Assembly: GCA_000388065.2 (NCBI GenBank)
Contig: KB932201.1
Length of the DNA stretch: 35,590 bases
DNA from: Fonticula alba ATCC 38817
Taxonomy: Eukaryota > Protista > Nucleariida
Strand: one strand, 5' to 3'
The notes under the pieces were generated by a model that was not told the DNA's origin, searched no databases, and worked only from the letters and a program-made list of their open reading frames with translations. Positions within the stretch are counted from its first letter, which is position 1; the number at the start of each line of letters is the position of its first letter. A program made the translations under genes and the position numbers. Below are positions 207 through 35,047 of this stretch, in pieces.

Positions 207-1831
207 AACGTGCTATCGTCTGTATACGGAGAATGCCTATCGCCATGAGATGCTCGAGAGCACGGTGCCGGAAATCCAACGGACCAACCTCAGCAATGCG
301 GTCCTCCTGTTGAAGTCTCTCGGCGTGCGCGACCTGTTGGAGTTCGACTTCCTGGACCCCCCGCCCCAGGCCAACATCCTCAGCTCCATGTACCAACTGT
401 GGACCCTGGGTGCGCTGGACAACCTCGGCGAGCTGACCCCCGTTGGCCGGGCGATGTCGGGCTTCCCATTGGACCCGACTCTCAGCAAGATGCTGATCAC
501 TTCCAATGAGCTGGCTTGCACCACGGAGATCGCCACCGTGGTGTCCATGCTGTCGGTTCCTCCTGTGCTGATGCGCCCGCGCGGGCGCGAGGAAGAGGCT
601 GACACCGCGCACGAGCGCTTCAGCGTCCCGGAGTCCGACCATCTGACCCTGCTCTATGTCTTCCGGCTGTACGAGTCGAACCGCTTCTCGGACGCCTGGT
701 GCGACAAGAACTTCATCAATCCCCGGTCCATGCGTAATGCGCGCGAAGTGCGCGACCAGCTGTTGGACCTCATGCGCAAGGCCCGGATGGACATGCGCTC
801 GTGTGGCAACGACTTTGACCTGGTCCGGTGCGTGACCGTCCCTGCTGAGGAGCTCCCCGCATCGGCGCGGGTGCCCCCTCCCCCTCTTCCTGATCCTGTT
901 CATTCTCCTTCCTTCCTGTTGCCCCATGTTCCGTCTCTTCCCGTGGCCATGCTTTATTGACGTGCCGTTGGTGTCGCCCGATTGCTGCTGCTGCTGTTGT
1001 TGTTGCTGCTCCTCCTCCTCCCCCCTGCCCCGTGTCCTCCACAGCAAGGCCATCTGTTCGGCGTACTTCTACCACGCGGCCAAGATGAAGAGCGTCGAGG
1101 AGTATGTAAACATGCGTACTGGCAAGCCGTGTCGTCTCGAGCGCTCGAGCGGCATCTTCCGCCTCGGCTCGCCGCCCGACTACATCGTGTACCACGAGCT
1201 GGTCATGACCTCGCGCGAGTACATGCGCGGTGTGACCGTGGTCGAGCCTTCTTGGTTGGCCACCCTTGGACCGATGTTCTTCAAGGTGGTCACCATGGAA
1301 AACCGTCTCGTACGTGCCGATGGTGGGGGACTCGTGCTTGGCATTCGGTTGGCCCTCCTTCCCCTTTGTCTGTTCCTGCCATTCCCGCTTGCTGCGATTG
1401 CTGACCCAGCTCGGCGTCTTTGCTGCCCTCGCCGATCGCCATCGGCAACACAGCGATCAAACTATCGTGACCATCTGGAGGCCGAGTCCATGGAGCGCGA
1501 GTTGGAGCGCGCGCGCGAGGCTGCCCGCATCCGCCAGGAGGCCGAGCAGGAACGCCGTCGTCGGCAGATGGCCAACACCGATGTGGTGACTGTCGGCCGC
1601 CGGGCGCCAGATGCCGCCGGGCCGCGCCAGACCACCTCCCTGGCCGGGAACTTGGCATCTCGCTTGGCCGTTCGGGCGGCTCTCAGTGGCAAGACCTCCA
1701 ATGCTCCGGCCGGCTCCGCATCGGCGGGCCCCGCATCGGGCGTGTCCACCGGATCGGCCGCGGTATCAACCGCCGGGGCCCGCCGGACGCTGCCCCCGCC
1801 GCCAAAGCCCCGTCGTCGCATGGGCATCTAG
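207..1831 (+). CDS. PRP16: Pre-mRNA splicing DEAH-box helicase Prp16/DHX38, 3' part (gene starts upstream of window). Exons 207-827, 1045-1309, 1454-1831
   Basis: Spliced translation [66 protein letters not shown]..(HA2)..DLVR|[35 protein letters not shown] (OB-fold) matches DHX38/Prp16 (SMYQLW motif); C-terminus PRRRMGI resembles DHX38 PRRFGL. Donors GTGCGT (828) and GTACGT (1310); acceptor AGs end at 206, 1044, 1453; frames join. Confidence 0.93.
982..1020 (+). repeat. Compound (CTG/TTG/CTC)n trinucleotide tract in PRP16 intron
   Basis: ttgctgctgctgctgttgttgttgctgctcctcctcctc inside intron 828-1044. Confidence 0.8.
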
Positions 1832-2216
1832 GCCATTCATCCCCGGCTGCTTGATCCCCGTGTCCGCCATTCTGCCATAGAGACACACTCCTTGATTGCG
1901 GCTTCACTCTCCCCCTTTTTGCTTGCTTTTCTCTTTTTTTTTTGCCGCCTGCCCCTCTCTCCCTCTCTTGCTCATGGGGGTTGCACGGCCGATGTGCCGC
2001 CCCTGTGCGCAGCCAGACGGGGCTGTCCACCAGGACAGGAGACAAAATGAAGAGTGGTATATTCAATCAAGGACAGGGAGGGTAGCACGCGTCTAACTGC
2101 ATCGAGACAGGGAGGGTCTCGTCGTGGCCAGTGCTCGTGGTGGAGGGGGGGGCGGGGGTGTTGGCGCGCCGGCGGCGACCGTGTGGCACCCGTTTCGCCT
2201 TCTTCGTGTGGCGATA

Positions 2217-5200
2217 CTAAGGATGAGCCTGGGCCTGGGCTTGAGCCTGGGCCTGGGCCTGAGCTTGCTGATGCTGCTGCTGGAAGGAGGCATAGCGAGC
2301 CGAGAGCTCGCCAGCCACCGTGCGCGGCATTCCCGGGAACATCGCATCAATCACCTCGTCCAGCAGGGAGTACACCATGTGGCGGTTGATCAGCTCAATC
2401 TGGAAGGCGTCGAAGAGCAGCTGTGCGCCCTGAAGCGAGGCATTCTCGCCAACCAGCGTGGCAAACATGTCTGCAGGCGCGTTGGACAGCCGGAGAGATG
2501 GGGAGATGGTGAGATGATGCCGGCGGGCCATGTGGGGAGCCGAATGGCGGGGGAATCTGATGGGGCCGGGAGCGGGCAGCGAGTCGAGAGGGGAAAGCAC
2601 GCACGAGGGAACAGTTGATGCAGGTGGTGCTGAGTGGTCAGCTTGGTCTCGGAGCGCTGCTCCGGCGTTCGGATGTTGGGCTTGTCGTTGTACACATCAT
2701 TCGGCCAGAAGGCATTCATGAAGGTGTCCATGTACCAGAGGATCTGATCGGGCAGGACCATCCAGCGGATATTCTCCGTGAGTTTGCTACCAGCAGGGGG
2801 GGGGGGGGTGTTAGTGGGACAGGCACGCAGGCAGTGGCGAAGGCAGCGAGTGGCACGGGGAAGGGGGGGGGGCAGCAGTCAACAGGCAAAAACACACCGC
2901 TCGATGGCACCACCGAAGATTTGCTGCAGGAAGATGAGCAAGGCGCCGCGCTTGAGCGACTGCGCGCGGCTGACCATCGGGAACAACACCGTCAGCAGGC
3001 TGAACAGCGGCTGCATCAGAGGCGACCCGCCGAAAGACCCGGCAGCCTGGGCAGCAGCTGGCCCGGCGGCCGCGGCCGCGGCCGCCACCGCCGAAGCCGG
3101 GGGTACCACAGCCGGCAGCGGTGGCAGCTCGAAGGGCAGCCCCTGGGGATCGAGTGTCGGGGACTCGGTGATGGAAAAGGCGGCCCCGGGCCCGGTGCCA
3201 GGGACGCCGGTGCCGGGGGCGGCAGCGGCGGCCCCGGTGGGAGCCGACGAGGCCGTGGCCGCTTGAGCCGGCGGCGAGCCTGCACCCAGGCCCAGGGTGG
3301 CCGCCTCGGATCCCAAAGCGCTCGCCGGCTGGGGACCCGGGCGCGACATGGTCGGGGCGGCTGGGCTCGTGGATGGCGAAGTGGAGTTAAACAGCAGAGA
3401 CCCGATATTTTGCAGGAAGGTCTTGTTGTTGGTTCGCGAGGCGTCAATGTCGGCCACCGGTCCGACCGCCGGCGAGGGAGCCGGTGCCGGGACCGATGGG
3501 GCCGGGCCCACGGCCGGACCGGCCGCCGGGGCCTTGGCCGAAGTGCCGGCCCCGGCGGCCACACTCGGGCGCGAGTGCGACCGACTGCGAGCGGGAGAAG
3601 AGCCACCTGCAGATCCATTGGCGGCGGCTTGGGGCTGCTCGATCAGGCTGATGAAGCGCAGCAGCGAGGGGTTCTTGTGGAGCTCCGGATGCCGGAGAGC
3701 CGCATTCAGGTATTCCTCCAAGGTGACACGCCGATTGGCCACGATGGCTGCCTCATTGCGGAAGGCCAGCAGGCTGAGGCGCTTGCTGGGGAAGGGGAGG
3801 CTGGCGGCCGCATGCGAGGATGCCGCCTGCAGGCGCGCATGGAGCAGCTCGAATTCGGTGAACCGCCGATGAATGAGCCACCCGCATTCCGGGTTCGACC
3901 GGCCCACCATGATGGCATAGCAGGTGTACCCCCGACGGGCCGGGGCGAAGAGGCCGCCGGAGTCCGGCGTGCCATGGGGCTGGCCGGCCGAGGTGCTGGA
4001 CCCGGCCCCCGAGGCCCCTGGGCCGCCGTCATTCCCGGAGAAGACCACCGGCGGCGAGGCCATGGTCAAGACGTCGACAATTCGCACGGTCCACACACCC
4101 GGCAGCATGTTATGATAGTAGCTCAACTTGGACAGGTACACCGCGCACTTCTCGTGGATCATGTTCTTGGCATGCATCAGCACGGCCCGGCTTTCGGCCA
4201 CCGTGGCCCCGGCGCCGGCCACGGCCGCGGCGGCCGCCGCCGCCGCCGACGACACCGGCGCCCCGGACTCCTGGGACCGATCAAGCATGGCAAGGGCCGA
4301 GTCCAGGACGGTCAACTTGAGCCGGGCGTCACCGAGCTCGGCATCCAGTTGGCCCACCTGCGACAGGAGGTTTCGCAGGAAGGTCGGCGAGTTGATGTCA
4401 TTCTCGTCATCCTCCTCGTCGGCATCCTCCTCCTCCTCCTCCTCGTCGTATTCCTCCGCTTCGGAGTTGCTGGCATGGACATGGCAGAATCCATCATCGT
4501 CGCCGCTGTCCCGGGCAACGGCCTTGGTGGCGCCGGCATGCGGGGGCACCTCGGGACCCTGGGAGGAGAACGACGCGTCGTCATCCTCCAACAGCAGAGC
4601 CCCATCGGCCGAGGCCAGCTGCAAGTCGGCCAGCGCCGGATCCACGGCATTTGGATCCGGCCCATTGAAGGAGGCACTACGAGTGGCCGGCCGGCCGGGG
4701 GTGCGGGACCGCCGCATGCGCGCCGGGCTGAACATATCCGTGGCCACACGGGCCCCATACCGCGCGGTGCCAGGGCCGGCGGCCGCAGTGGCTCCGGCAG
4801 TTGACCGGTGCGAATCGGTCACCACAGCCCCGGAGGCCGAGGCAGTGGCCGCCTCGCGTAGACACGACTCCAGCAGGGAGATGACCTGCGTCAGGAAGAC
4901 CGAATCCTCCTCGGGCCGGATGGCCGAGGGAAGATCGCCAGCCGGCTCCGCAAGCAGCGTTGCCATGGCGTCGGTCGAGGAGCCGGTCCCGGCGCCGGAG
5001 CCCCCGAGCAGGGCCGGCGGCGTGTCCACCGGGGCACTGGCCACCAAGGCCGTGGGCGAGGAAGCCAGGGGGTCGGCCGGGGCGCTGGCCGACAGGTCGG
5101 CCAGATTGCTGGAACTCATGGACGTGGTCAGCGAACTGAGGATGGCCGTCAGAGGACCGGTGGCCGAAGACCCGGACCCCGGGCCGAGGGAGCCCCCGGC

Positions 5201-8200
5201 TGTCGAGGAGACTGACCGCCGGTGGGCGGTATTCGCGGCCGCAGCCGAGGCCGTCGCCGCGGCCGAGGGCGGGATGGCCACAGGCGTGGAGGAGATGTAC
5301 CCGCTCCGGGGGTGAATGGTGACATTGGGCGGCAGGGGCGGGGCCCCGGCCGAGCCGCTGGCCGAGCCACCCCCGGCCCCGATGCCGGTCGACGGCACGG
5401 CCGGCGTGAACTGGTCCGGCGAGGAGAAAAGCGAAGTCAGCTTCGCCGAGAAGGAGGTCGACCGGCGAAGAGCCGCCGTCGAGACGGCCGGCCCGCCGCC
5501 ATTCGAGGCCGAGGATGACCGCTGGTGCGAGGTCTGGCCAGAGGGGGATCGCGAGAGCGAATCCACCGCCGGGTCGGACCAGTCCGGCGGGACCAAAGCC
5601 CCCGAGGTGGGGGTGGCCCCATTGCTGCCGGAGTAGTGCGACTCGGTGGCGGAGAAGGCCACCGTCAAGTCGGACATCGAGCCGGCCTGGCTCCCCTGGA
5701 ACAGATCGTCCGAGGTGACAGCCGACTTCAGCGGCGAGGTGATGGATCCGAGAGGCCCGGCGCCCGGGCTGCCGGCTTGCGAGGGCAGGCGCGCCTGGGC
5801 AGCCGGCCCCGGGGCACTGTCCACCGCCACGGAGATGGCCGGCAGGGAGGCCGGCGGCGATCCGGCACCCGAGTCCGAGGTCTCGGATGCCTTCGGCTCT
5901 TCCGGGTCACCGGGGCTCGGGCCCGGGTCCTCCGCCTGGGGTGCCTCCTGCGAAAGGTCCGCAAGGGTGGCATGGCCACTTGCCTCGGCCGGGATCGAGG
6001 GCGACAGGGGGAAGCCGGAAGTTTTGCGGAAGCCCGGGGGCGAGTCGGCGGCCACCTCGGGCGATGGGGGCCGAGCGTCGGCCGCCGGCGCAAGGGGCGA
6101 CGAGGTGACGGCCACCGGCGCGGGCGACACCGTCAGCGGGGTGGCCGTCGTCGGAGTCGGTGGAAGCACCGTCGTCATGGGAAGGACGGCAGGGGCCGCC
6201 AGCCCGAGAGCCAATGGGAGGACATCCGGCGACACGGACACCGATCCACGGGGGAGGGTCCCGGAGTCGAAGCCGGCAAAGGCCGGCGGCAGCCCGCCCC
6301 CGGCGGCGATGCCCCCGAGCGGGAACTCCTGATCCAACTGGTCGTCAAGCGCCAATTGGTAAAAGTAGTGCGAGGCCTCGAATTCGCTCTGGAAGCGAGC
6401 CAGCATCTGCAAGACACAGGAGTAGATCTGCAGAAGGAGCTGCTCGGCGCCGGAGGGCGCCTCATCGACCGAGGGCCCGGCGCCCTCGGCTCCAGGGCCG
6501 GCCGACAGGCCGACACCGGGTGACTCGGTGGCCGAGCCCGCGACCGGCAGACCATCGGGGGCCGAGCCGACGCGCGACGCCCCGGCCGACAGGGCCTCCT
6601 GATGCTGGTCGATGAAGGCATCGATGAGGATCTGCAACCAGGAGTTGCCGAGATCCACGCGCTCCGGCGAGGCCGCTTGCAGATGGCGAGAAATGATGGG
6701 GAGCAGCTCGCGCGTGGCCAGATCATCGGTCTGCGGCTGGCCGACGGTGCGAGAGGCCCGGCGCTGGGCATGCGCACGCGCCAGCGCATCCACCAGGCTC
6801 GACAGAGAGTAGTGCCCTTGGGACTCGAGGAAGGCCATGAAGTAGAATCGCCCAACCGGCGAATCAAACAGGCGATAGATGGACCAGTCGGCTGGTGACC
6901 CGGCTGGCGAAGCATCCGGCCGGCTGCCCGATGCCCCGGCCGATGGGAGCTCGGTCACCAGGGACCCGCCCTCCGGCAGGGGGGACTCATTCAGTCGGCG
7001 GACCAGCTGCTCGCGCACCCGGGCAAAAGAGTCGATATACGACACGCCGGTCACCTCGTTCAGGCGCTTCTCCACGCTCTTCAGCAGGAATTGCAATTGC
7101 CGGGCATAGCGCGACCCCGAGCGTTGGTGGTCATTCTGCTGCTCGCGCAGCCGGGCGATGATCATTTGCCGATAGGCGCGAAGGTCCAAGATGGTGGTGG
7201 AGGTTTTGATCTTCTGGAGGAAGGACTCGAAGGATTGCGGGGTGCTGTTCGGGCCGCCGGTGCCCCCGCCGCCGAGGGCTCCGCCGGCGCCCCCCGGGCC
7301 AAGAGCCCCACCGGCCCCGGCTCCGCCCTGCTGGATCAGCGCCTCGGGGCTCATGTTCTTGATGAGCTTGTTGGCCGACTCATACTGGTTCAGGAACCGC
7401 AAAGCCTGGTACCCCAGGTGTTGGTTGATGTAATCCGGATCCGACAGCAGGTTGACCACTGGCAGAAGGGCAATATTGGCCAGCAACTCCCGAGCAAAGA
7501 GCATGAGCCCGTGCGACACCTCCAGGCCCAGGCGCGAGTCCGACAGGATGTGCTGCGTCATGATGCGCAAGTATTCCAGCTCATAGGCCACGCCCGGGTG
7601 TCCGGGATCGGCTTTCGACGGCCACCGCTCGACCGGCGTGGCCACCGACAGGCTATGGTGGAGGTATCCCCGAAGGGCGGGGTGGATCTGTGGCAAGGGG
7701 TCAGCAAGTTGCAATCGTCGAGGTGGGAAGGCCAAGTGGCCGAAGGCCAAAGCACCGAGCAGCAAGCAAGATGCACGTACGCCGCCGGCGGAGGCAAACT
7801 TCTCCAGCACCCGCCGCGCAAGGAGCGGGTTCTCCGAAAGATCGGTCGACTGGTTGGCATGGTGCCGGCGGACCAACTCAGACGCCTCCTGGAACCGAGC
7901 CAGCTGCATCGTCAGGATGGGAACTGGATTCGGAGAGAGAGAGAGAGAGAGCGCGCGCGCGATGACCACAGTGGTGTTTCCGGCGGAGGGGGGGAGGGGG
8001 TGTTATAAATTGGGCATGGCAAGGGAGGCGAAGGAGATAGGAGCAGCAGAGGGACGCACTGGTCCGCTTGATGATCAGGTCCACGATGTCGACGCGGCTC
8101 CCATGCGACCAGAGGGAATCCAGCAGCGTGTGCAAAATACACCGGACCTACGGGCAAGGCGGCGGCGTGGGCCATGGTTAGGACACCGTGCGGAGGATGG

Positions 8201-9204
8201 GCCGAGCCGAAACCCCGAGAGCCAAGTCGGAAGGAGCAAAAGGAGCGGCGCACCTTGAGTGGGATCACCTGGTCCGTGCTGATGTACTGGTACCAGGACT
8301 GGACGAAGTCCCGAATGAGGTTGTTGAGAGTCCGTTGAACCTTTGGAGCCAGGAGGCCCTGGATGTCATCGGGAGAGGGGGTCCGATCGGAGGCCACGGA
8401 GAAAGGCATGCTATAACCAGAGAGAGAGAGAGAGAGAGTGGGAGAGGGAGGGGAGCACAGCAAGAGCCAGGGATCCGACGCCAGGGTTAATACAGCTGCA
8501 TGTGCTGGAAGGTCAGGGAGGAGGGGAGGGGGCCAGCAAGCACGAGCATACCTATTTAGCATGGTATCGAGGTTGCTGGTCTCACGCTCGCGGAAGGGCA
8601 AGATCTACATTTGGATGTCAGATGGGGGGGGGGGGGGCAAAGGGAAGCGAGAAAGAAGGCAAGAAGAAAGCCACCGAGGGCCAAAGAAAAAGAAACCAGC
8701 CAACTTTGGCACACGCACCAAGCCCCACAGGGCGACGATGCTGAAGGGCCACGACCGGTAGGTATGGGTCCCAAAGCCATCCACACCACCAAGCACCAGG
8801 TAATTGTCGCGGCGCCGCTGCCATGCGGCGGTAGCCACGACGCCGACGAGGAAGCCGACCAGCAGCAGCGGCAAATACACAAGTAGCAGGAGCCACACCC
8901 CGGGGAGCAGGAAATTCAGCAGGGTCACCAGTATCAGGGGGCCGGTCAGCAGAGGCATGTATGGCTGAATGCGAGCCAGCGGTGGGGTGATATGCTGGCG
9001 CGCGATGGCAAGGGCCTCCTGAGCCGGGGCCGGCAGGCGCCCATGCACGCTGGCCAGCTGCCGCGCCAGGTGGTCCGCCAGGACTGCGAGCCGGGAGGAG
9101 GTAGTGGCCGGAGCGCCAGCCCGCGCGGCCGGAGCCACAGCCGGGCCACAGCCCAGGCCATCGGTCGACGGATTGGAGTGCGGGGACTCGACGTCAACGG
9201 ACAT
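2217..9204 (-). CDS. PXA-RGS-PX-PXC sorting nexin (SNX13/14/19/25, yeast Mdm1 family), about 2081 aa. Exons (minus) 9204-8719, 8604-8552, 8410-8254, 8147-8060, 7923-2898, 2786-2605, 2470-2217
   Basis: N-terminal hydrophobic segments (LILVTLLNFLLPGVWLLLLVYLPLLLVGFLVGVV); PXA motifs LIRDFVQSWYQYISTD and FARELLANIALLPVVNLLSDPDYINQ; degenerate RGS start LFDSPVGRFYFMAFLESQG; PX YAIMVGRSNPECGWLIHRRFTEFELLHARL..PFPSKR..RRVTLEEYL; PXC QIFGGAIERKLTENIRWMVLPDQILWYMDTFMNAFWP and NRHMVYSLLDEVIDAMFP. All six introns GT-AG; summed exon length 6246 nt is a multiple of 3 ending in TAG. Confidence 0.9.
2227..2274 (-). repeat. Coding hexamer repeat giving a (QA)n / poly-Q tail in the sorting nexin
   Basis: gcctgg units on the + strand; translation QQQHQQAQAQAQAQAQAQAHP*. 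Confidence 0.8.
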
Positions 9205-22470: not shown

Positions 22471-24951
22471 TTACACGCATCGGCGGTTCAGGGCCACATG
22501 GCCGGACTCCTCCCACTCGGCGCGGCTGACCCACTTGGTACCGAAGCTGGAGAGACTGGTGACAATGCTGCCCCCGGTCCAGGCCATGTTCCGCCGGTCC
22601 ATGGGCGATGCCTCAGCGATGATGCGCGGCTGCTGGAAGGACTGCAGGCGCTGGCCCAGCTCGGCCGACAGGCGGCTGGCCAGGCCGTCGATTGCCGAGC
22701 ACCCTCCGGCCAGGGCAATGTGCGATGCCAGAGCCGCGCGATTGTCCACATCCACATTGGCCAGGCAGCGCTCAATCAGCTCCGGCAGGCCCAGGTAGTT
22801 GGAGGATTCGGCCCCTGGGGTGTGGCTGACGCTCGGCGGCAGGCCGGCTGTCGGGTAGCTGATCGGCAGCCCATACGCCTGGAGGATGTCACGCGGGTTA
22901 AAGAGAACCTCCCCGCAGACGGCTCGCTCCAGGCCGCCGTACAGGTCGTTGAAGCCGCACGGGAACTCGTACAGTCGCTGGGATCCGTGGGCACTCACAG
23001 ACAGGCTGGTATGGGCTTGCGCCCGGGCGGCACACCCGGCGGCCGAGGTGTCCGAAAAAGAGGGCAGCGGGCTGGGAGGAACGGCCGTGATGGACTGGCG
23101 CCAGTCGGCGGCCACGCGCTGGTGTGGTTATGCGCGGGCGTGGGAGTGGGCGTGTGTGTGTGAGTGTGTGAGTGTGTGAGTGTGTGAGTGTGTGAGTGTG
23201 TGTTTGTGTGTATGTGTGTATGCGTGAGTGCATGCGTGCATATTAGAGAGGAGTGGGGAAGGAGGACACAGTATGAGGGTGGAAGGTGGGCCAGACGGGA
23301 CACAAGGGTAGTATGGAGGAGAGGAGCCGGGAAATGCGCACCAGCTGATGGAAAGAATGGAAGGAAGGATGTGTGTTGGGGAAGGAGCGGGTTTTGAATT
23401 GGGCCGGCTGGCCGGCGTTGGTGGCTGAGGAGGGAGGAAGGAGAGGGGCGAGGGGGCAGGGACGAGGGAGAGACGGGGAGACGAAAGGGTGAGAGTTGAT
23501 ACCAAAGCGAGGGCGTGCGCCGGGGGAGACGACAAGGAAAGCTGTCGGCTGGCGTACGGCGCTTGTCCAGGACCAAATAGCCCGGGGTGATGGTGTGGTT
23601 GGGCCCAGGCCGGAGAGTTCGGCGCTGGGGGCTCCCCGTGGTCGCGGCAGAGGCTGCCGCCTGGTCCTCGCCCGGGGCCACACCGAAGGCGACCTCGCGC
23701 TTGGCCACCGCATGCAGGGCCAGCGCGTCGAGCAGGTCACCACCAAGAGGCTGCCAGGCGATGGCCTTGCGCAGGGCTATTCCATCGAGCACCGGCGTGA
23801 CCGTGGTCTTGGTGGCACCAATGTCCACCACAAGGGCGGTGGCGCGGTGCGAGGCGAAGGCCGCACACACGGCATCTCGGGCCACGTAGAAGGCCGGCAG
23901 GGAATACGTCTCGAACATGTGCTCAGCCAGGGTATTCCGGAAGGAGGGCGGAGCAAAGGAGGGCTCGATCATGAAGAGGGGATCCTATTGCCAGGGGTCG
24001 TCGCAAGAGGAGGCCACGCAGGCCAAGCCAGGAGCCCTTTGGGTCAGTGAATGGGCCCCGTGCGAGCGCGCGCGCGCGCGCGGATGCGTATGCGTGTGTA
24101 TGCGTGTGTGTGTGGGGGGGGGGGGGGGAGGGGGGGGGGGCAGGGGAGAGGGGGGCTTGGCCGGCCGGGCNNNNNNNNNNNNNNNNNNNNNNNNNNNNNN
24201 NNNNNNNNNNNNNNNNNNNNNNNNNNNNNNNNNNNNNNNNNNNNNNNNNNNNNNNNNNNNNNNNNNNNNNNGGCCGATTGGGCAAGGCACCCGCCACGGG
24301 GAGAAGCTCGAGCGGCCTTGTCGGGGAGGGCACTCTCCGGGGGAGGGGGGGACGGGCGGGTGGGCCCATGGCCAATGGTGGGGGGGGGGGGGGGGGAGGG
24401 GGGGGGGCACGGGACGGGCCCTGGATGGAACGCACTTCGCCCTTCACGGCGCCCAGCTGATTGAAAGCCTGCGACCAGATGGCCTCCGCATCATCCCAGT
24501 TGGTCACGGCGCCAGCGCGAATGGGCTGGATGAGCTCGGCATCATCGCGCCGGGTGAAGACCGCATGGTCGCCGACAAACCGCGACGCACGGGCTGGATC
24601 TGCGAGGAGTGTGAGCATCGGGCAATGCGCAAGATCAAAGGAAGGCAGGGGGCCGAAGACGCACCCGAGGTGTTGACACTGATGGAAGACAGGATGTTAG
24701 CTTCGGGGCTGAGGTCGCCGGCCCAACCGGCGCGAGTGGCGTATGAGCCGATCTCCAGCACAACGGCAGGAGTGTCGTCTGCAGCGGTGAAGGGAGCAAG
24801 AGCGGAGGGGGGGGGGGGTAAAAGCACGAGTGAGAGGGGCATCCAGACAAGGTGGCCAAAGTATGGTCGAGAATCGGGCACGAAAGGGCGCACCTCCTCC
24901 TCCGAAAACGGCCGAAGTGGGGGGCGGCGCCCCGGGGGCAGAGCTGGACAT
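22471..24951 (-). CDS. ARP4: Nuclear actin-related protein Arp4 (ACTL6/BAF53 family), about 497 aa. Exons (minus) 24951-24894, 24778-24665, 24599-24436, 23984-23558, 23424-23342, 23118-22471
   Basis: VFGGGDDTPAVVLEIGSYATRAGWAG (Arp4-type YGGDE..GSY..RAG start), DPLFMIEP, EHMFETYSLPAFYV, ALVVDIGA, YEFPCGFNDLYGGLERAVCGEVLFNP (ACTL6-like YEFPNGY), WTGGSIVTSLSSF..WVSRAEWEE, terminal RRCV. Five frame-consistent introns, total 1494 nt. Confidence 0.88.
23157..23196. repeat. (TGTGTGAG)x5 in the last ARP4 intron
   Basis: Five exact 8-mers embedded in TG-rich sequence. Confidence 0.9.
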
Positions 24952-25420: not shown

Positions 25421-25992
25421 ATGACCGCCCAGAGGCGCTGCCCTCGCCAGGGCATCAAGCGTGTGGTCAAGAAGGCACAGCCCGGCCTCAAGCTCGGCGC
25501 CAACACTGACCTCCTGGTGCGCCCCAATGCCGCCCCCAGGCTCCCTCCATTTTGCCCTTGGCCAGGCGTCCGAGCTCGGTGCCCTTTTCTTCCTTCTTTC
25601 GATCGTCCCCCTTCTTCCGCGATTTCCTCCTCACGGCTGACACACAAACCCATACGCGCGCGTGTGTAAACTCCCGACGCTGGGTCAGATCTACCTGAAC
25701 TACATCGTCTTCATCCGGCGCCTGGCGGCACAAGCCGCCTCGGAGGCCCAGACCAGTGGCCTGCGAAAAATCGACGTCGATACCCTGCAAAATGCCCTGG
25801 AGGTGTGTGGACTTTGCCTTGTGCCCCCACCATCCTTGAGCCCCTCATGCCGATCGCGCCCTTTCTCCTCGTTCCGCCCCCGCTTTCCCTCTTCCCCACT
25901 CTGCTCGAGGATCTCTAACACTGGGTGTGCTCCCCCCCCCCCCCCCTGCCGCTCTGCATGCACAGAAAGTTCTCCGAGAGGCAAAGGGGTAG
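25421..25992 (+). CDS. CENPW: Centromere protein W (histone-fold CCAN subunit), 78 aa. Exons 25421-25516, 25689-25802, 25966-25992
   Basis: Spliced product MTAQRRCPRQGIKRVVKKAQPGLKLGANTDLL|IYLNYIVFIRRLAAQAASEAQTSGLRKIDVDTLQNALE|KVLREAKG* aligns end to end with the remembered CENP-W pattern PRGFLKRVFKRKKPQLRL..DLLVHLNCLLFVHRLAEES..A......I...H...A.K..LKKSRG. Both introns phase 0 with GT..CAG; AATAAA at 26067. Confidence 0.85.
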
Positions 25993-26072: not shown

Positions 26073-26173
26073 GCACTCGAAGAGTGAAAAAAAACAAACA
26101 AACAAAAAAACCTGTTGTTACCCTATTTGTCTTCTTGATTGGCCGGCACTCCCACGTATCGAGGGGTATGCCC

Positions 26174-28033
26174 TCATAGGCCCGAGTACATGGGAGTGTC
26201 ACCAACACCACGGATGTGGGGATCGTCCGCCAACAGGCGGTCCTTCTCTTGGTGGATCATCTGGCTGACGATGGCCGGGTCGGCCTTCTTGCGAGTGACA
26301 ACCGCCACCAGAACGGCGACAATGGTGATCGCCGCCACACAGGCCAGCGACACCAGGGCATAGAAGAAGACAATCGGCTTGCACTCCTGCGTGGTGGATG
26401 GGTCGTCAGGACATGGGGCGCATCGGCCGCAGGGTCGGCGGGAGACAGGGCAAAAACAATGGGACAGGGGGGGGGGAGGGGAAACACGCACAACGAGGCC
26501 ATCCTCCCCGGTGACCGGCTCGGACAGGGGGCTGCAGTTGCGCGGAGCCGAGGACCCTTCCGGACAGACGGAATCCTCCGGGCAGATGATCGGCCGCCCG
26601 GTGGTGACCGATGGGCAGTAAAAGCCGGCCGGGCAGATCCGGCAGTCGTCAGCTTGAGACGAGCCAAACTGGTCCAAATAGTAGCCCGTTCCGCAGGGGG
26701 TGCAGTTGGCCGAGCCGGACAGCTCGGCGAAGGACCCCTGGGGACAGAGAAGGCAGCCGACGTGCCCGTAGTTGGGCTGATACATGCCGGGCTCGCAGTT
26801 GATGCACTTCGGGCAGGGAGAGGTCCTGGGGGGGGGGGGAGGGGNNNNNNNNNNNNNNNNNNNNNNNNNNNNNNNNNNNNNNNNNNNNNNNNNNNNNNNN
26901 NNNNNNNNNNNNNNNNNNNNNNNNNNNNNNNNNNNNNNNNNNNNNNNNNNNNNNNNNNNNNNNNNNNNNNNNNNNNNNNNNNNNNNNNNNNNNNNNNNNN
27001 NNNNNNNNNNNNNNNNNNNNNNNNNNNNNNNNNNNNNNNNNNNNNNNNNNNNNNNNNNNNNNNNNNNNNNNNNNNNNNNNNNNNNNNNNNNNNNNNNNNN
27101 NNNNNNNNNNNNNNNNNNNNNNNNNNNNNNNNNNNNNNNNNNNNNNNNNNNNNNNNNNNNNNNNNNNNNNNNNNNNNNNNNNNNNNNNNNNNNNNNNNNN
27201 NNNNNNNNNNNNNNNNNNNNNNNNNNNNNNNNNNNNNNNNNNNNNNNNNNNNNNNNNNNNNNNNNNNNNNNNNNNNNNNNNNNNNNNNNNNNNNNNNNNN
27301 NNNNNNNNNNNNNNNNNNNNNNNNNNNNNNNNNNNNNNNNNNNNNNNNNNNGGATGTGTGGAACATGCGCAAGGGAGCGAGGGGGGGAGGACCGATGGGG
27401 GATTCGCGCGCACCGGCTTCGAGGAAAAGTGCCCGGGGGGGCACTTGAGGCACATCTGCAAGCTCGGGCAGTATCCATCCGGGTAGGGGATCCAGTCGCT
27501 GCCGGAGGAGCTGGACCCGGGGGTAGACCCGGGGGTGGAGTCTGAGAAAGAAGCATCGGAGGAGGTGCTGTTGGCCGAGGAATCCGAGAAGATGTCGGAA
27601 TCAGGGCCAGAGGGATCCACCGGGGGCAGGGAGCCGGAGGAAGAGGGCATCGAGTCGGTAGGGCTGGAGGAGCTGCTCCGGGGCCGGCTGGGCGGCGGCT
27701 CCTGGCAGCGGCTCGAACAATGGCGGCTATTCCAGTAAAAGCCGGCCGGGCAGGGAATGCACACTGGCCGAGCGCGCGGGGCGAGGGGGAGGGGGGGGGA
27801 GAGGGAGGCAGAGATAAGCGAGGTGAGTGGAACGCGGAGAAAAAGAAAAAAGAAGGACAGGAGAGGACAGTGGGGGGGGGGGGAGGCGAAGACGCACGCG
27901 CGTCGTCATCGATCGCCAGATCCCACCGTGGCGCTGAGCCCCGGGCGGGCGTGATAGAAAAAATAACACCAACAAGGAGCAGCATCAGGACGCTGCGAGC
28001 GCCGGGGTGCGCCGGCCGTGTGCGTTCGGACAT
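26174..28033 (-). CDS. Type-I membrane protein with CxxCPxGxY/F Cys-rich repeats (GCC2/GCC3, ephrin-receptor-like type), a Ser-rich stalk and a short tail. Exons (minus) 28033-27898, 27763-27414, [hidden exon(s) in gap 26845-27351], 26825-26492, 26386-26174
   Basis: Signal-like MSERTRPAHPGARSVLMLLLVGVIFSITPARG; repeats CIPCPAGFYW, CLKCPPGHF, CINCEPGMY, CLLCPQGSF, CTPCGTGYY, CRICPAGFYCP, CPEDSVCPEGS; TM IVFFYALVSLACVAAITIVAVLVAVV then RKK; tail ends EKDRLL..YSGL*. Confidence 0.8.
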   Translation of the reverse strand: MSERTRPAHPGARSVLMLLLVGVIFSITPARGSAPRWDLAIDDDARASSPPPPPTVLSCPSFFFFSAFHSPRLSLPPSPPPSPSPRALGQCAFPARPAFTGIAAIVRAAARSRRPAGPGAAPPALPTRCPLPPAPCPRWIPLALIPTSSRIPRPTAPPPMLLSQTPPPGLPPGPAPPAATGSPTRMDTARACRCASSAPPGTFPRSRCARIPHRSSPPRSLAHVPHIXXXXXXXXXXXXXXXXXXXXXXXXXXXXXXXXXXXXXXXXXXXXXXXXXXXXXXXXXXXXXXXXXXXXXXXXXXXXXXXXXXXXXXXXXXXXXXXXXXXXXXXXXXXXXXXXXXXXXXXXXXXXXXXXXXXXXXXXXXXXXXXXXXXXXXXXXXXXXXXXXXXXXXXXXXPPPPPRTSPCPKCINCEPGMYQPNYGHVGCLLCPQGSFAELSGSANCTPCGTGYYLDQFGSSQADDCRICPAGFYCPSVTTGRPIICPEDSVCPEGSSAPRNCSPLSEPVTGEDGLVVRVSPPPPLSHCFCPVSRRPCGRCAPCPDDPSTTQECKPIVFFYALVSLACVAAITIVAVLVAVVTRKKADPAIVSQMIHQEKDRLLADDPHIRGVGDTPMYSGL

Positions 28034-29472: not shown

Positions 29473-31540
29473 TCAATTGAAGCTGAACACCAGCTGCGGA
29501 GCAGGCGACTCTCGGCCTGCGGGACTTTCGGCCAGGGCTGGGCCAGCCTTGGTGGCACCCACGCCCGATAGAGCCGCCTCCAGCAGGAAGAAGGACCGCA
29601 AGACATCCACCACGGCCAGGATCTGGGCCACAGCCAGGACCAGCGTGATGGCGAAAAAGAAGTTGGCATTCCCCGCGCCGGAGCCAACCCACACATACCA
29701 CAGCGCCGGGGCCAGGGCCGTACTGTAGAGAACCAGCTGCCCCACGAGGAAGGTGTGCCGAAGCCGGTCGCCGACATAGCACATGTGCGCCAGCAGAACC
29801 GCCGCCGTCAGGGCGTAGTCCCCGACCGCGGGATACGGCTTTAGCAGGTTGTAAATGGCAATAAGCATGGCCGCCAGCAGGAGCGGCTGGCGCCTGGGGG
29901 CACGATGATGAGGAGGGGGATGTCCAGTGAGTGGATTTGCGACAGAGAGAGAGAGAGAGAGCGGGGGGGGAGGGGGGGGGGGGGCACAAAACGCGCCGGG
30001 CGAGGATAGGTCGGGGGAGGGAGGCGCACCACAGCCGGATGCTCAGCGGGACTAGGTAGATCAGGATGTTCACCTGGAACACCACACGATAGAAGACCGC
30101 AAAGGGGGCAAAGATCTCCAGCAGGAAGTACCAGATGAGCCCGAGATTCGGGGCCAGGTCCGGAATGGTGAGCCTGACCGGCAGAGGAAGGCAGGAGAGA
30201 CGGTTCGATGGTGAGTTTCAAAGTGACTGGCGACGTCGACCGAGGCACATGGATGCGCATGCGCATGTGCAACAGGATCCATGTGCATGGGCCTTTCTGG
30301 CAGGCAGATGTCTCCACTGGAATGCATGGATGTGCGTTTCCAGAGAGAGAGAGAGAGAGAGAGATGTATGCGCGCGTGTGCATGTACGTGCGCATCTGTG
30401 GGCACTTGAGGACGTACTGGAAGAGGTAGACATGCTGGATGAAGGTCCAGGAGCCAATCAAGGCACGGGAGCCGGCCAGCAGGGCCACTCCGGCGAGCAG
30501 CAGGCCCAGAAGCATGGCGGCCACAGGGCCAGCCCGACGGCCGGGAGCACGCTGTGCCAGCAGCAGCCCACATGGAACCACCAGCATCAGGGGGTACACC
30601 CCAAAGTAGGCGGCGAAGGCGAGGGCCGCACCGGCCAGCAGCGGCGATCCCCGATCCGCGGCCACCAGCGCCCCGAGGCTGAAGAGGTTGAGCAGGGAGG
30701 GGCTGACGCCCGGGAAGGCAGCCGACGCCAAAAGGAAGGGGTTCAGCAGGTAGGCCACGCCAAGCAGGCCAGGTCCGACACCGGACTCGGGCCGGAGGAG
30801 CACCCCGTGGTGCATGGCCGGCGAGCCGGCATCATCGGCAGCTCCGGCAGCAGGGGCTGCGGCACCGGCGGCCGGGCCCGGCGCGGCATCTGCCAAAGGC
30901 CCGCCGGGAGGGCCGCGCGACCGAGCACCAGGAGTGGCCACGGCCGAAGACCGGGCAGTCGCCTGGCTGTCGGCCAGTTGGGCATCTTTGGGGCGATCCT
31001 CGCCGCTGGCGAGGGCGCCCGTCGGGGACGCCACCAAGAAGGACCGCCGCCAGGAGATGGTCCGCTCGAGCACCGACCGGGAGAAGCGAATGACCAGCAG
31101 GGCGGTCAGCACATCGGCCAGCGCGGCCACCAGTGCCGACGCCACCGGGCGGCCGGCCGAGCCGAGCAGTGTATCCAGGTAGGCTGGCAGGAGCGAAAGC
31201 GGCGGCTGGGCCCGTCAAATGCGAGGAAATGCATCGGCGATGGGCAAGGGAAGGAGGCTCGGGCGGTGAGTGGCCGACGGGAGCCGGGAAGGAAGCCGGG
31301 CCGAGGGGCACCGCGGCGATGAGACACACGGTCCATGGGGCGCACCTGGTGCAAAGTCCACGAGGAGTAGGGATCGATACCGCGGGTCCACAGCCAAACC
31401 CCCTCCTGCAAGGCGGTGTGGTCGCCGGCGGTCGGCGACTGGAGGGCCGACTGGGCAGCTGGCCATTGGCTGCCGAGCAGGAACAGACGAATAGCCAAGG
31501 CGGCCGCCCCGACTGTCAGGGCAACCAGCGGGCTGGCCAT
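29473..31540 (-). CDS. PIGU: GPI transamidase subunit PIG-U (Gab1), about 515 aa. Exons (minus) 31540-31346, 31205-30418, 30173-30030, 29893-29473
   Basis: LQEGVWLWTRGIDPY..LHQ|PPL; AYLLNPF; LTIPDLAPNLGLIWYFLLEIF..F...VFQVNILIYLVPLSIRL; LKPYPAVGD; LWYVWVGSGAGNANFFFAITL. These are diagnostic PIG-U motifs in a multi-TM protein; total 1548 nt in frame. Confidence 0.93.
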
Positions 31541-32498: not shown

Positions 32499-32535
<37 letters not shown>

Positions 32536-32702: not shown

Positions 32703-33008
32703 GTCGGGTCCCAGAGCACAGGCCTCGGGGGTCGGGGCCCGGGGGTCCGTGTGACCGGCCCCTTTTCCGCGGCTCCATCTTTGCCGGAGGCGGGGTGGGG
32801 GGGAAGAGGGGGCGGGCCTCGGTCCGACACACCCGCGCGCTCAGCCCGCCGGGCAGGTGGGCGCGCATGTGTGCGCATGGGGGGGGGGGATAGTTTCCCT
32901 CGGGTGGGCGGGCACGCATGAGCGCGCGATCCGCGCCTCCCCCCCCCCTCCCCCTCGCCCCTCCCGTGGGTAACACCTCCTCTGCGATTTGTCCCACGCG
33001 GTTGGGGG

Positions 33009-33016
33009 TATATAAG
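33009..33016 (+). promoter_or_regulatory. Putative TATA box (TATATAAG) upstream of TTD14
   Basis: Canonical TATAWAWR match about 260 nt upstream of ATG 33273, in otherwise very GC-rich DNA. Confidence 0.55.
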
Positions 33017-33272
33017 CGGCCAAGCCGGCGCCGCCCGGTGAAGAACCCTTGGTGCCTTTTTCCCGCCATCCCCGCCTGCCCATCCTCCCTCCCCCTTCGC
33101 CCCCCCTTTGTTGGCGCGTGTGTGTGTGTGTGTGTCCCTTCCCTGGGCCGCTCCTCCCGCCCTCCCCTTCCTCCTCCGTCCCACCATTCGCCTGCCCCTC
33201 CTCCGGCGGACGCCCCTGCTGCTGCTCTTCCTTTCCCTGCTGGCCCTGGCTCCCCTGCTCCTGAGTGCCACC

Positions 33273-35047
33273 ATGTTCGACGCCCATCCGATCATTCGTC
33301 CCCCACCTGTGGAGGTTGTCCAAGACTCCGAGAAGCAGAATGCCCCGGTCTTCCGTGTTGTCCTGACCGGCGGTGCGTGGCCCCCCGTGCCTCCCCTCGC
33401 CCTCGCCCTCGCCCTCGCCCTGGTGTTGGCTTCCTCATCTGCCCTCGGTGCTCCGATCGCGGCCTGCCCTCTGGCACAGATCTCCCCGACCTCCTCCATC
33501 TCCTCCCCCCTTTGCCCGCCCCTGACATGCCCTCCGTCCTTCTGCCGCTGCTTTGGCGTCGTCCCGGCCGGCGACAGGCCCCTGCGGCGGCAAGACCACC
33601 GCTCAGCAGCAGCTGATGGATACCTTCTCCTCGCTTGGCTGGAAGGTCTTCCGCGTGCCCGAGGCCGCCACCCTGCTGCTCGGCGGTGGTGTTGTCTTCA
33701 GCGAGTGCACCCCGGAGCAGAGTACGTGTCGAGCCCGCTTCCGAGAAGATGCCCTCCCCCCCCCCCCCTCCCCTGTGTGCGGTCCACATGGCATGTCTTC
33801 CCTTGCTGACCGATTGTTCCCCTCCCCCCCCCCCCCCCCCCGCTTGGCGGCCGCTCCCCTGCCGGGCCGGGCCCCATCATCCGTCCAGGCTTCATCTTCC
33901 AGGAGCAGCTCCTGCTGGCCATGCTGTCCATCGAGAATGTCTTCTTCGAGATGGCTCGCTCCAACTCCGAGCTCGGCATCAAGACCATTGTCCTGTGCGA
34001 TCGTGGAGCCATGGACGCCAGCGCATACATCAGCCGCGAGGACTGGCGCCGGATCCTCGAGCGCAATGGCCTTGACGAGGTGGAGCTTCGCGACGCGCGC
34101 TACGACGTCGTCGTGCATCTGGTCACCGCGGCCGACGGTGCCGAGGGCTACTACACGCTGGCCAACAATGCCGCCCGGTCGGAGGGGCTCTCCCTGGCCC
34201 GGGAGCTGGACAAGAAGTCCTGCAATGCCTGGGTCGGTCACCCGGTGCTGGATATCATCGACAACAGCACCCCCTTCACGCAGAAGATCGAGCGCGCCAC
34301 GGCCGCCGTGGCCAAGCGCCTGAACATCCCCGGGGTCCCGACCATCGACCAGCGCAAGTACAAGTTCCTGGTGGCCTCCCTGCCGGAGTCCTTCCCGGTG
34401 GAGCATCAGGACTTCCAGGTGGTCCACGATTATCTGATCTCGGATGGCACCACCGCGGCCGATGGCGACCGTATCCCGCAGCTGCGCATCCGTCGCCGCG
34501 GCCAGGGCAAGCTCTTCACCTATACCCTGACTCAGCGCGTGCGCCTGCCGGATGGCCAGCGCCTCGAGACTCGCCGGTCCATTGCCGCTCGTGAGTATGA
34601 GACTCTCTTGGCTCAGCGTGACACCACTCGCAACTCCATCGTCAAGCGCCGGATTTGCTTCATGAGCGACTCGCGGTACTACCACATCGGTATGAGGGCA
34701 TTCCTTTCGCGGCTTCCCCCCGCGCCCACGCCTTTCTCCCCCGCCCCCCGGTCTGCTGTCATCGGCGGCCCATGATGCTGACACACTGCTCGCCTGTCTC
34801 GCTTGCGCCCTGCCCTGCCCTGCCCTGCCCTGCCCCCCGTACAGATGTCTTCCAGGAGCCCCATGCCGGCCTCCTCCTTCTGGAGACCTACAGCCAGGGC
34901 CCGCCTGAGCTGCCCCCCTTCCTGGATGTCATCCGCGATGTCACCAATGACCCCGACTACAGCATGTTCAACCTGTCCCGCATCTCTCCCTCCCCTTGCG
35001 CCGAGGCCACCGTCTCCTCTTCGCCCTCCCTGGAGATCTACGAGTAG
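33273..35047 (+). CDS. TTD14: TTD14-like protein (TRPL translocation defect 14): N-terminal AAA_28-type P-loop NTPase fused to a CYTH-like domain. Exons 33273-33372, 33578-33721, 33889-34689, 34845-35047
   Basis: RVVLTGG|PCGGKTT (Walker A), GWKVFRVPEAAT, FQEQLL, CDRGAMDASAY, RDARYDVVVHLVTAADGAE, RSEG..ARELD..AWVGHP..DIIDNS, RKYKFLV, QDFQVVHDYL, LRIRRRGQ, KRRICF, LLLLETY, DVTNDPDYSMFNLS, all closely following Drosophila TTD14 motifs as I recall them. Confidence 0.9.
34807..34835. repeat. (GCCCT)x5 in the last TTD14 intron, just upstream of the acceptor
   Basis: Five exact pentamers plus GCCC. Confidence 0.9.

What the first reader, a model, noticed from the sequence alone, without database searches (positions are those of the whole stretch)
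828..34844. 5' splice sites are GTGCGT-type with no +4 A in 35 of 35 introns: possible rewired U1/U6 recognition
Seen: the 35 donors from the ten spliced genes are GTGCGT x17, GTGCGC x7, GTACGT x5, GTGTGT x2, and GTACGC, GTATGC, GTATGA, GTTCGT x1 each. Position +4 is C in 31, T in 4 and never A; +5 is G in all 35; +3 is G in 26. Established: most eukaryotes favour GTRAGT, where +4 A faces U1 and then the METTL16-methylated A of the U6 ACAGAGA box. In budding yeasts, the shift away from +4 A has been associated with loss of METTL16/SNRNP27K. Inference: this lineage may have lost U6 m6A, or may carry a compensatory U6 (ACG in place of ACA) or U1 5' end (ACGCAC/ACGUAC) that pairs with +4 C. Caveats: the sample is small, donors were hand-picked (though constrained by frame and homology), and high GC may contribute.
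Basis: partly seen in the sequence, partly recalled or inferred. Interest (0 to 1): 0.75.

Follow-up and report, generated by a model that had tools for sequence, protein, structure and literature searches.

The report
Fonticula introns start GTGCGT, never +4A
In the amoeba Fonticula alba every checked intron begins with GT-(G/A)-C-G-(T/C) rather than the usual GT-A/G-A-G-T; this is a real, selected dialect of the splicing signal, best explained by a matching one-letter change in the U1 splicing RNA, and similar dialects are already described in a few other protists.

Summary
The window is Fonticula alba scaffold KB932201.1. Position +4 is C in 32 and T in 4, never a purine. +5 is G in all 36, and +3 is G in 26 and A in 9.

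- **Evidence for the introns:** Six are cut out exactly in transcript contigs. Twenty-eight sit in models that reproduce seven public CDS lengths exactly. A gene parser blind to donor sequence found 17 on its own.
- **Not composition:** Intron interiors are 47% C, 25% T, 19% G and 9% A, so all-pyrimidine +4 has P about 7e-6.

C or U at +4 and A or G at +3 is the pattern that pairs with a U1 5' end reading ACGUAC. Predicted duplexes average -10.1 kcal/mol, against -4.8 for canonical U1.

I could not reach Fonticula's U1, U6, METTL16 or SNRNP27K. This scan has already noted the same donor code in many other windows of this genome, and a follow-up reports a U1 gene with ACGUACCU. I did not re-test those notes.

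The same U1 change with GUGCGC donors is published for Mastigamoeba balamuthi. I also found a G5 U1 beside nine +4C/T introns on a metagenome contig.

The parts
828..1044 (+). intron, donor GTGCGT, DEAH helicase C-terminal part (gene A)
   Evidence: blind parse placed it exactly; the OB_NTP_bind profile starts at the first residue of the next exon
1310..1453 (+). probable intron, donor GTACGT (gene A); the acceptor could also be 1409
   Evidence: PWM parse only; in frame and stop-free, so motif and composition are the only support
8605..8718 (-). intron, donor GTGCGT at 8718, sorting nexin (gene B)
   Evidence: model reproduces the public 2050-aa CDS exactly
8411..8551 (-). intron, donor GTATGC at 8551 (gene B)
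   Evidence: public CDS length reproduced
8148..8253 (-). intron, donor GTGCGC at 8253 (gene B)
   Evidence: blind parse; CDS length
7924..8059 (-). intron, donor GTGCGT at 8059 (gene B)
   Evidence: blind parse; CDS length
7688..7780 (-). intron, donor GTACGT at 7780 (gene B), 93 nt and in frame
   Evidence: the 2050-aa public length is reached only if it is removed; CTGAC lies 13 nt from the AG
2787..2897 (-). intron, donor GTGTGT at 2897 (gene B)
   Evidence: blind parse; CDS length
2471..2604 (-). intron, donor GTGCGT at 2604 (gene B)
   Evidence: blind parse; CDS length
12293..12476 (-). intron, donor GTGCGT at 12476, RMND1/DUF155 (gene C)
   Evidence: blind parse; 519-aa CDS reproduced
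11687..11846 (-). intron, donor GTGCGT at 11846 (gene C)
   Evidence: blind parse; DUF155 profile 52->57 across the junction
11357..11518 (-). intron, donor GTGCGT at 11518 (gene C)
   Evidence: blind parse; DUF155 profile runs on across the junction
11132..11253 (-). intron, donor GTACGT at 11253 (gene C)
   Evidence: blind parse; DUF155 profile resumes at 140
10796..10951 (-). intron, donor GTGCGT at 10951 (gene C)
   Evidence: donor found by blind parse; acceptor fixed by the public CDS length
16871..16963 (-). intron, donor GTTCGT at 16963, SF3A1/PRP21 (gene D)
   Evidence: blind parse; the model gives the 579 aa of P0001
16588..16699 (-). intron, donor GTGCGT at 16699 (gene D)
   Evidence: matches the sequence of P0001
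15841..16534 (-). intron, donor GTACGT at 16534 (gene D); spans the N gap 15944-16518
   Evidence: exons on both sides match P0001; the donor hexamer is in read sequence
15622..15736 (-). intron, donor GTGCGT at 15736 (gene D)
   Evidence: matches P0001
20896..21013 (+). intron, donor GTGCGT, EB1 (gene F)
   Evidence: blind parse; 341-aa CDS reproduced
21121..21291 (+). intron, donor GTGCGT (gene F)
   Evidence: blind parse; CDS length
24779..24893 (-). intron, donor GTGCGC at 24893, actin-related protein (gene G)
   Evidence: 497-aa public CDS reproduced
24600..24664 (-). intron, donor GTGCGT at 24664 (gene G)
   Evidence: Actin profile 35->46 across the junction; CDS length
23985..24435 (-). 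intron, donor GTGCGT at 24435 (gene G); spans the N gap 24171-24271
   Evidence: blind parse; Actin profile 87->96 across the junction
23425..23557 (-). intron, donor GTACGC at 23557 (gene G)
   Evidence: CDS length
23119..23341 (-). intron, donor GTGCGC at 23341 (gene G)
   Evidence: CDS length
25517..25688 (+). intron, donor GTGCGC, CENP-W (gene H)
   Evidence: blind parse; one of only two GT-AG models that give the public 72 aa
25803..25909 (+). intron, donor GTGTGT (gene H)
   Evidence: same enumeration of models
27764..27897 (-). intron, donor GTGCGT at 27897, ephrin-receptor-like Cys-rich protein (gene I)
   Evidence: 337-aa public CDS reproduced
26807..27413 (-). intron, donor GTGCGC at 27413 (gene I); spans the N gap 26845-27351
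   Evidence: CDS length
26387..26491 (-). intron, donor GTGCGT at 26491 (gene I)
   Evidence: CDS length
31206..31345 (-). intron, donor GTGCGC at 31345, PIG-U (gene J)
   Evidence: skipped exactly in transcript contigs of 4 runs
30174..30417 (-). intron, donor GTACGT at 30417 (gene J)
   Evidence: skipped exactly in transcript contigs
29894..30029 (-). intron, donor GTGCGC at 30029 (gene J)
   Evidence: skipped exactly in transcript contigs; blind parse
33373..33577 (+). intron, donor GTGCGT, AAA_28 protein (gene K)
   Evidence: skipped exactly in transcript contigs
33722..33888 (+). intron, donor GTACGT (gene K)
   Evidence: skipped exactly in transcript contigs
34690..34844 (+). intron, donor GTATGA (gene K)
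   Evidence: contig pieces end at 34689 and resume at 34845 (table 8); blind parse
34591..34596 (+). unused sense-strand GTGAGT inside an exon of gene K (a decoy)
   Evidence: transcript contigs run through it unspliced; one of 9 sense GTRAG sites, all exonic

Best explanation
These are ordinary major-spliceosome GT-AG introns of Fonticula alba, but the lineage's 5' splice-site consensus has moved from GTRAGT to GT(G/A)CG(T/C).

Shown: the shift is real, it holds for all 36 introns of ten unrelated genes, and +4 is under selection to be a pyrimidine (C far more often than U) beyond what C-rich intron composition would give.

Inferred: the donors are read by a U1 snRNA whose position 5 is G (5'-AUACGUACCUG) instead of pseudouridine. 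Then +4C forms a G-C pair, +4U forms a wobble pair, and +3A or +3G pairs with U6 of U1. This gives a continuous 6-7 bp helix (G:C, U:A, G.U or A:U, C:G, G:C, U:A). The most likely history is that GC- and C-rich introns pushed +4 towards C and U1 then followed, or the reverse, as proposed for Mastigamoeba balamuthi.

Not inferred: any change in U6. I assume its ACAGAGA box is unchanged, and how U6 A43 (methylated or not) handles +4C is open.
For: - Organism: 100% match to H696_00739 [Fonticula alba], KB932201.1.
- Donors: RNA contigs 6/6; blind parser; seven public CDS lengths reproduced; Pfam continuity across junctions.
- Statistics: +4 C32/T4/A0/G0 against an intron interior of C .47, T .25, G .19, A .09 gives P(no purine) 7e-6 and P(at least 32 C) 1.6e-7.
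- Pairing: mean predicted duplex -10.1 kcal/mol with a G5 U1 against -4.8 with canonical U1. AUC of real donors against 973 sense GT decoys is 0.94 against 0.71. With canonical U1, 196 decoys pair at least as well as the median real donor; with G5, only 18 do. All nine sense-strand GTRAG sites are exonic and unused, and one is shown unspliced.
- Precedent: M. balamuthi has a U1 reading ACGUAC and prefers GUGCGC donors (bioRxiv 10.1101/2022.06.08.495308).
- New natural example: metagenome contigs L002-L004 carry a full-length Rfam U1 (70 bits) beginning AUACGUACCUG. The two intron-bearing genes beside it have 9/9 donors with +4 C or T (GTACGT, GTACGC, GTATGT, GTGCGT, GTGCGC, GTACGA), six of them fixed by a continuous Pfam profile.
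- Lead, not evidence: scan note s1-065344 with its follow-up reports a Fonticula U1 gene with ACGUACCU.
Against: I did not see Fonticula's own U1 or U6. No snRNA lies in the window, and no tool gave access to the rest of the genome.

The pairing test is partly circular, because any motif with +4C favours a G5 U1.

Thecamonas trahens and the Mamiellales have +4C or +4Y donors with a standard U1, so +4C does not require a U1 change.

+3 is G more often than A, which is only a wobble against U1 U6, and 9 of 36 donors have +6C, which does not pair with U1 A3.

The sample is 36 introns from one 35.6-kb window. The genome-wide claim rests on other windows' unchecked notes.
Confidence: 0.66

Rival explanations
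1. Standard U1 with a tolerated mismatch. Fonticula keeps the canonical U1 (ACUUAC), and +4C arose from C-rich intron composition. It is tolerated because recognition leans on +1, +2, +5 and +6, on U1C/LUC7-type proteins, and on later U5/U6 proofreading, as in Thecamonas trahens and the Mamiellales.
For: +4C or +4Y donors with a standard U1 are documented in T. trahens and five Mamiellales. Fonticula introns are 47% C. I never saw the Fonticula U1.
Against: +4 is far more C-rich, and purine-free, than composition predicts. With canonical U1 the real donors pair hardly better than decoys (AUC 0.71). A scan follow-up reports a G5 U1 in this genome (untested here).
Confidence: 0.2
2. The primary change is on the U6 side: loss or altered use of METTL16-dependent m6A43 or of SNRNP27K, or a changed ACAGAGA box, with +4C following from that, by analogy with budding yeasts.
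For: In Saccharomycotina, +4 preference tracks METTL16 and SNRNP27K presence (PMC10581693). +4 faces U6 A43 after U1 leaves, so some accommodation of +4C at U6 must exist.
Against: The yeast shift is to +4U, which pairs with unmethylated A, not to +4C. ACAGA was invariant in all 240 species examined. An untested scan note says the genome keeps METTL16. Nothing in the window bears on this directly.
Confidence: 0.08
3. Artefact: donors were picked by eye, or by an annotation pipeline trained on its own motif, so the uniformity is circular.
For: 19 of the 36 donors were not placed by the blind parse, and 13 of these rest on the PWM parse plus the public annotation rather than RNA.
Against: Six of six introns tested with transcript contigs are exact. 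A parser blind to +3..+6 hit 17 exactly. 17 of the 24 GTGCGT hexamers in the window are donors.
Confidence: 0.02

Closest known systems
Mastigamoeba balamuthi 5'SS/U1 co-evolution (bioRxiv 10.1101/2022.06.08.495308)
   Same: The preferred donor is GUGCGC or GUGCGU, with +4C and +3G. The proposed reader is a U1 with ACGUAC, in which G pairs with +4C. The genome is intron-rich rather than intron-poor.
   Different: It is an archamoeba (Amoebozoa), whereas Fonticula is in Holomycota, sister to Fungi, so the change would be independent. In Fonticula +6 is mostly T, which pairs with U1 A3, whereas Mastigamoeba prefers +6C. Fonticula's U1 was not seen by me.
Thecamonas trahens and Mamiellales (Micromonas, Ostreococcus) +4C / GYGCGY donors
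   Same: GC-rich genomes whose donors prefer a pyrimidine, mostly C, at +4.
   Different: Their U1 keeps the canonical ACUUAC. If the scan's U1 note holds, Fonticula differs in having compensated.
Saccharomycotina +4A-to-U shift linked to METTL16/SNRNP27K loss (Parker et al. 2023, PMC10581693)
   Same: A lineage-wide move away from +4A. +4 is the position that meets U1 Psi5 and then U6 A43.
   Different: The yeast shift is to U, not C. U1 ACUUACC and U6 ACAGA are invariant there. The association is with protein loss. In Fonticula only 4 of 36 donors have +4T.
Entamoeba GUUUGU donors with U1 AACAAAC
   Same: Core U1 recognition sequence and donor consensus changed together.
   Different: Different bases (two U-to-A changes). 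The genome is intron-poor and AT-rich, with near-invariant donors.

Membership tests
U2-type (major) GT-AG spliceosomal introns | GT at the 5' end and AG at the 3' end, removed from mRNA | tested here: met
   36/36 are GT...AG. Six of six tested are removed exactly in transcript contigs.
U2-type (major) GT-AG spliceosomal introns | Branch-site motif (YTRAY) upstream of a pyrimidine-rich 3' end | tested here: met
   The strict motif YTRAC occurs in 23 of 36 introns (CTGAC 16, TTGAC 3, CTAAC 3, TTAAC 1), and the looser YTRAY adds 4 more (27 of 36). Acceptor -3 is C or T in 34 of 36. The branch site is often far from the AG (median 48 nt).
+4C donors with compensatory U1 (Mastigamoeba type) | Donor consensus with C at +4 and R at +3 | tested here: met
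   +4 C 32/36 and T 4/36; +3 G 26, A 9
+4C donors with compensatory U1 (Mastigamoeba type) | U1 snRNA 5' end reads ACGUAC (G at position 5) | not testable with these tools
Scan note s1-065344 reports it. The pairing prediction is consistent.
+4 shift by METTL16/SNRNP27K loss (Saccharomycotina type) | +4 preference for U over A | tested here: not met
   +4T in only 4 of 36; the preference is for C
+4 shift by METTL16/SNRNP27K loss (Saccharomycotina type) | Absence of METTL16 and/or SNRNP27K genes | not testable with these tools
   No query sequence or proteome access was available. Scan note s1-066369 says METTL16 is kept (untested).
U12-type (minor) introns | Donor [AG]TATCCTT and branch site TCCTTAAC | tested here: not met
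   None of the 36 donors has ATCC at +3..+6

The most novel reading that the evidence does not exclude
Fonticula has re-tuned both snRNA contacts of +4. Besides a G5 U1, the U6 ACAGAGA/5'SS helix works with a C opposite A43, which would need either an unmethylated or differently modified A43 despite a retained METTL16, or a protein contact replacing the m6A:A pair. That would make it a natural system in which the U1 and U6 requirements at +4 can be separated. In addition, G5 U1 plus +4C may have arisen at least three times (Mastigamoeba, Fonticula, and the unidentified organism of L002).
Probability: 0.15. Interest if true: 0.75.

Novelty: new member of a known kind. Interest (0 to 1): 0.5.

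Why it matters
The U1 5' end and the GTRAGT donor are among the most conserved RNA-RNA recognition pairs in eukaryotes. Documented cases where both sides changed together are very few: Entamoeba, Mastigamoeba, and partly Physarum. A further, phylogenetically independent case in the sister lineage of Fungi would show that this co-evolution recurs and follows the same path (U5 to G with +4C).

It also raises a concrete question for the current two-class model of 5' splice sites: what does U6 m6A43 do when +4 is C?

In practice, gene finders and splice-site scorers trained on GTRAGT will misplace Fonticula donors. The motif GTRCGY followed by C/T-rich sequence is a strong annotation signal in this genome.

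Tried and rejected
- Rfam on the window found no snRNA or tRNA.
- Exact look-ups of the long plus-strand ORF 17743/17911/17980-20112 found nothing. The public annotation instead calls a 315-aa gene on the opposite strand.
- The search for homologous proteins with the 1674-aa sorting-nexin exon returned nothing, probably because low-complexity words filled the candidate list.
- Frame-only enumeration of GT...AG pairs is hopelessly ambiguous in this GC-rich sequence, and GC3 alone finds few coding frames.
- The blind parser misplaced several donors by 3-30 nt, including RNA-confirmed ones, so it serves only as an enrichment test.
- Literature searches found no paper on Fonticula splice sites, snRNAs or METTL16.
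- I found no route to Fonticula's U1, U6, METTL16 or SNRNP27K. The collections that can be scanned by DNA pattern do not hold this genome. The look-up of encoding contigs needs an exact protein next to the target. No eukaryotic METTL16 sequence was available by reference.
- I rejected pure composition as the explanation, U12-type introns, and the hand-picking artefact.
Full report
**What the window is.** The window is 35,590 bases, about 67% G+C excluding Ns, with seven N gaps. An exon of the SF3A1-like gene is 100% identical to 'hypothetical protein H696_00739 [Fonticula alba]' (P0001). That protein maps to GCA_000388065.2, scaffold KB932201.1, 3447690-3470443, which is window positions about 4436-27189. 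This confirms the organism name that earlier notes of this scan had given as a lead.

**Genes.** From codon-usage scoring, Pfam scans exon by exon and the public gene table, the window holds ten spliced genes:
- A: the C-terminal part of a DEAH helicase
- B: a PXA-PX-Nexin_C sorting nexin
- C: RMND1/DUF155
- D: SF3A1/PRP21
- F: EB1
- G: an actin-related protein
- H: CENP-W
- I: an ephrin-receptor-like Cys-rich protein
- J: PIG-U
- K: an AAA_28 protein

**Checking the donors without hand-picking.**

1. *Transcript evidence.* Four runs of one 2012 study hold about half the words of 28990-34989. Their Logan contigs are labelled 'RNA?' but behave as transcripts. They cover exons, leave the intergenic 31790-32789 empty, and skip exactly six GT-AG introns. 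The minus-strand donors are at 30029 (GTGCGC), 30417 (GTACGT) and 31345 (GTGCGC). The plus-strand donors are at 33373 (GTGCGT), 33722 (GTACGT) and 34690 (GTATGA, intron ending at 34844, the finding's end coordinate).
2. *Blind parser.* I wrote a dynamic-programming parser that sees only GT...AG, a codon log-odds table trained on three long exons, and zero-order intron composition with the first six intron bases left out. It placed 17 of the final donors exactly. It also made obvious small errors at others, so I use it only as an unbiased enrichment test. A second pass with a weak donor matrix recovered most of the rest.
3. *Public annotation.* Exon models built with these donors reproduce the public CDS length, ATG and stop, with no internal stop, for seven genes: B 2050 aa, C 519, D 579, G 497, I 337, F 341 and H 72. 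For D the model also matches the sequence of P0001. The exons were joined only inside scripts, to count length and frame.
4. *Profile continuity.* Pfam profile coordinates run on across junctions: Actin 35->46 and 87->96; DUF155 52->57, 104->(34 aa)->140; OB_NTP_bind starts at the first residue after the 828 intron.

**Tally.** There are 36 introns: GTGCGT 17, GTGCGC 7, GTACGT 6, GTGTGT 2, and GTATGC, GTTCGT, GTACGC, GTATGA one each.
- +4 is C 32, T 4.
- +5 is G 36.
- +3 is G 26, A 9, T 1.
- +6 is T 26, C 9, A 1.
- The exon side is weak: -1 is G in 20 of 36.

Seventeen of the 24 GTGCGT hexamers and six of the eight GTACGT hexamers in the whole window, both strands, are donors. All nine sense-strand GTRAG sites in the ten genes are exonic and unused. 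GTGAGT at 34591 is read through unspliced by the transcript contigs. The weakest item is the intron at 1310, which is in frame and stop-free and rests on motif and composition alone.

**Assembly gaps.** Three introns span gaps: 16534->15841, 24435->23985 and 27413->26807. Their donor hexamers are in read sequence. The exons on both sides are in frame according to the public CDS lengths, and for the Arp gene the Actin profile is continuous across the gap. Exons hidden in the gaps cannot be ruled out, but they would not change the donor counts. The other gaps lie upstream of start codons or between genes.

**Is it just composition?** Intron interiors are C .47, T .25, G .19, A .09. Absence of A alone is only mildly unexpected (P = 0.03). 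Thirty-two or more C has P = 1.6e-7, and no purine at all has P = 7e-6. +3 is purine in 35 of 36 against an expected 28% (P about 1e-16 on the 33-intron set). So +3 to +6 is a selected motif, not drift.

**What reads it.** C or U at +4 and A or G at +3 are exactly the bases that pair, by Watson-Crick or wobble, with a U1 5' end reading ACGUAC. They are the opposite of what Psi5 of canonical U1 pairs with. With ViennaRNA duplex energies, real donors average -10.1 kcal/mol against AUACGUACCUGG and -4.8 against AUACUUACCUGG. The area under the ROC curve for 36 real donors against 973 other sense-strand GT sites is 0.94 against 0.71. This test is partly circular, but it shows that canonical U1 pairing would barely mark these donors.

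**Literature.**
- A 2022 preprint (10.1101/2022.06.08.495308) reports that Mastigamoeba balamuthi prefers GUGCGC donors and has a U1 with ACGUAC.
- The same preprint reports that Thecamonas trahens and five Mamiellales prefer +4C or GYGCGY yet keep a standard U1. +4C therefore occurs in nature both with and without compensation.
- Parker et al. 2023 (PMC10581693) link a different shift (+4A to U) in budding yeasts to METTL16/SNRNP27K loss, with invariant U1 ACUUACC and U6 ACAGA. That analogy does not fit a shift to C.
- I found no paper on Fonticula splice sites or snRNAs.

**A new natural example.** Scanning the metagenome collection for a U1 with G5 plus the two conserved loop motifs gave three near-identical contigs, L002-L004 (about 55% GC over L002). 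Rfam calls a full-length U1 on each (70 bits, gathering threshold 69.5) beginning AUACGUACCUG, with the GAUCAGGAAG and CAUUGCAC loops and an Sm site.

The two intron-bearing genes beside it have nine introns. A TatD-containing gene has GTATGT, GTACGT, GTACGC, GTACGT, GTATGT and GTACGC. A DNA_alkylation gene has GTACGA, GTGCGC and GTGCGT. Six of the nine junctions are fixed by continuous Pfam profile coordinates. Seven have +4C, two have +4T and none has +4A. The sample is small and the organism unidentified, but it is an independent co-occurrence of a G5 U1 with +4 pyrimidine donors.

**What the scan knew already.** The same donor code was noted in many other windows of this genome, and one of those notes has a follow-up calling it real (s1-065562). 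Another follow-up (s1-065344) reports a Fonticula U1 gene with ACGUACCU on another scaffold. A first-stage note (s1-066369) says METTL16 is retained. I could not re-test the U1, U6 or METTL16 claims. No snRNA lies in the window and the tools gave no access to other parts of the genome. They are leads, and my confidence in the U1 step (about two in three) reflects that.

**Verdict.** This is a new member of a known kind (+4C donor dialects, probably with U1 co-evolution), and it is of moderate interest.

Noticed in passing
L002:1638-1803 (+), also L003:1960-2125 (-) and L004:1584-1749 (+): Metagenome contigs of an unidentified eukaryote (about 55% GC over L002) carry a full-length U1 snRNA (Rfam 70 bits) whose 5' end is AUACGUACCUG (G at position 5), flanked by tRNA genes. 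The two neighbouring intron-bearing genes have 9 of 9 donors with +4 C or T.
   Followed up: partly
window 17743-20115 (+) against 18971-19918 (-): The public annotation calls a 315-aa gene with no Pfam domain on the minus strand. The antisense plus-strand ORF (788 codons) has a much higher codon-usage score (138 against 8) and is the 'LisH orphan' of scan note s1-066024. One of the two readings must be wrong.
   Followed up: partly
window gaps 15944-16518, 24171-24271, 26845-27351, 28331-28805: Assembly gaps are bordered by long C or G homopolymer runs (for example GTACGTCTCCCCCCCC|NNN at 16534), and three of the seven gaps lie inside introns. The C-rich intron tracts probably broke the assembly.
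   Followed up: no
all 36 introns: The branch-like motif CTGAC is present in 16 of 36 introns, but often far from the acceptor (median 48 nt, up to 166). This agrees with scan note s1-065693 about distant branch points.
   Followed up: partly
window 7688-7780 (-), 1310-1453 (+), 16871-16963 (-): Three introns have lengths that are multiples of three. Those at 7688-7780 and 1310-1453 also have no in-frame stop, so retaining them would give in-frame insertions rather than truncated proteins.
   Followed up: no
window 34297: All four transcript assemblies read T where the genome assembly has C. This is either a strain difference or an assembly error.
   Followed up: no
window 14436-17189 (-) and 1-1831 (+): Two splicing factors lie in the window: SF3A1/PRP21 (two SURP modules and PRP21_like_P, with no ubiquitin domain seen) and the tail of a DEAH helicase that a scan note calls PRP16. 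Both look ordinary.
   Followed up: no
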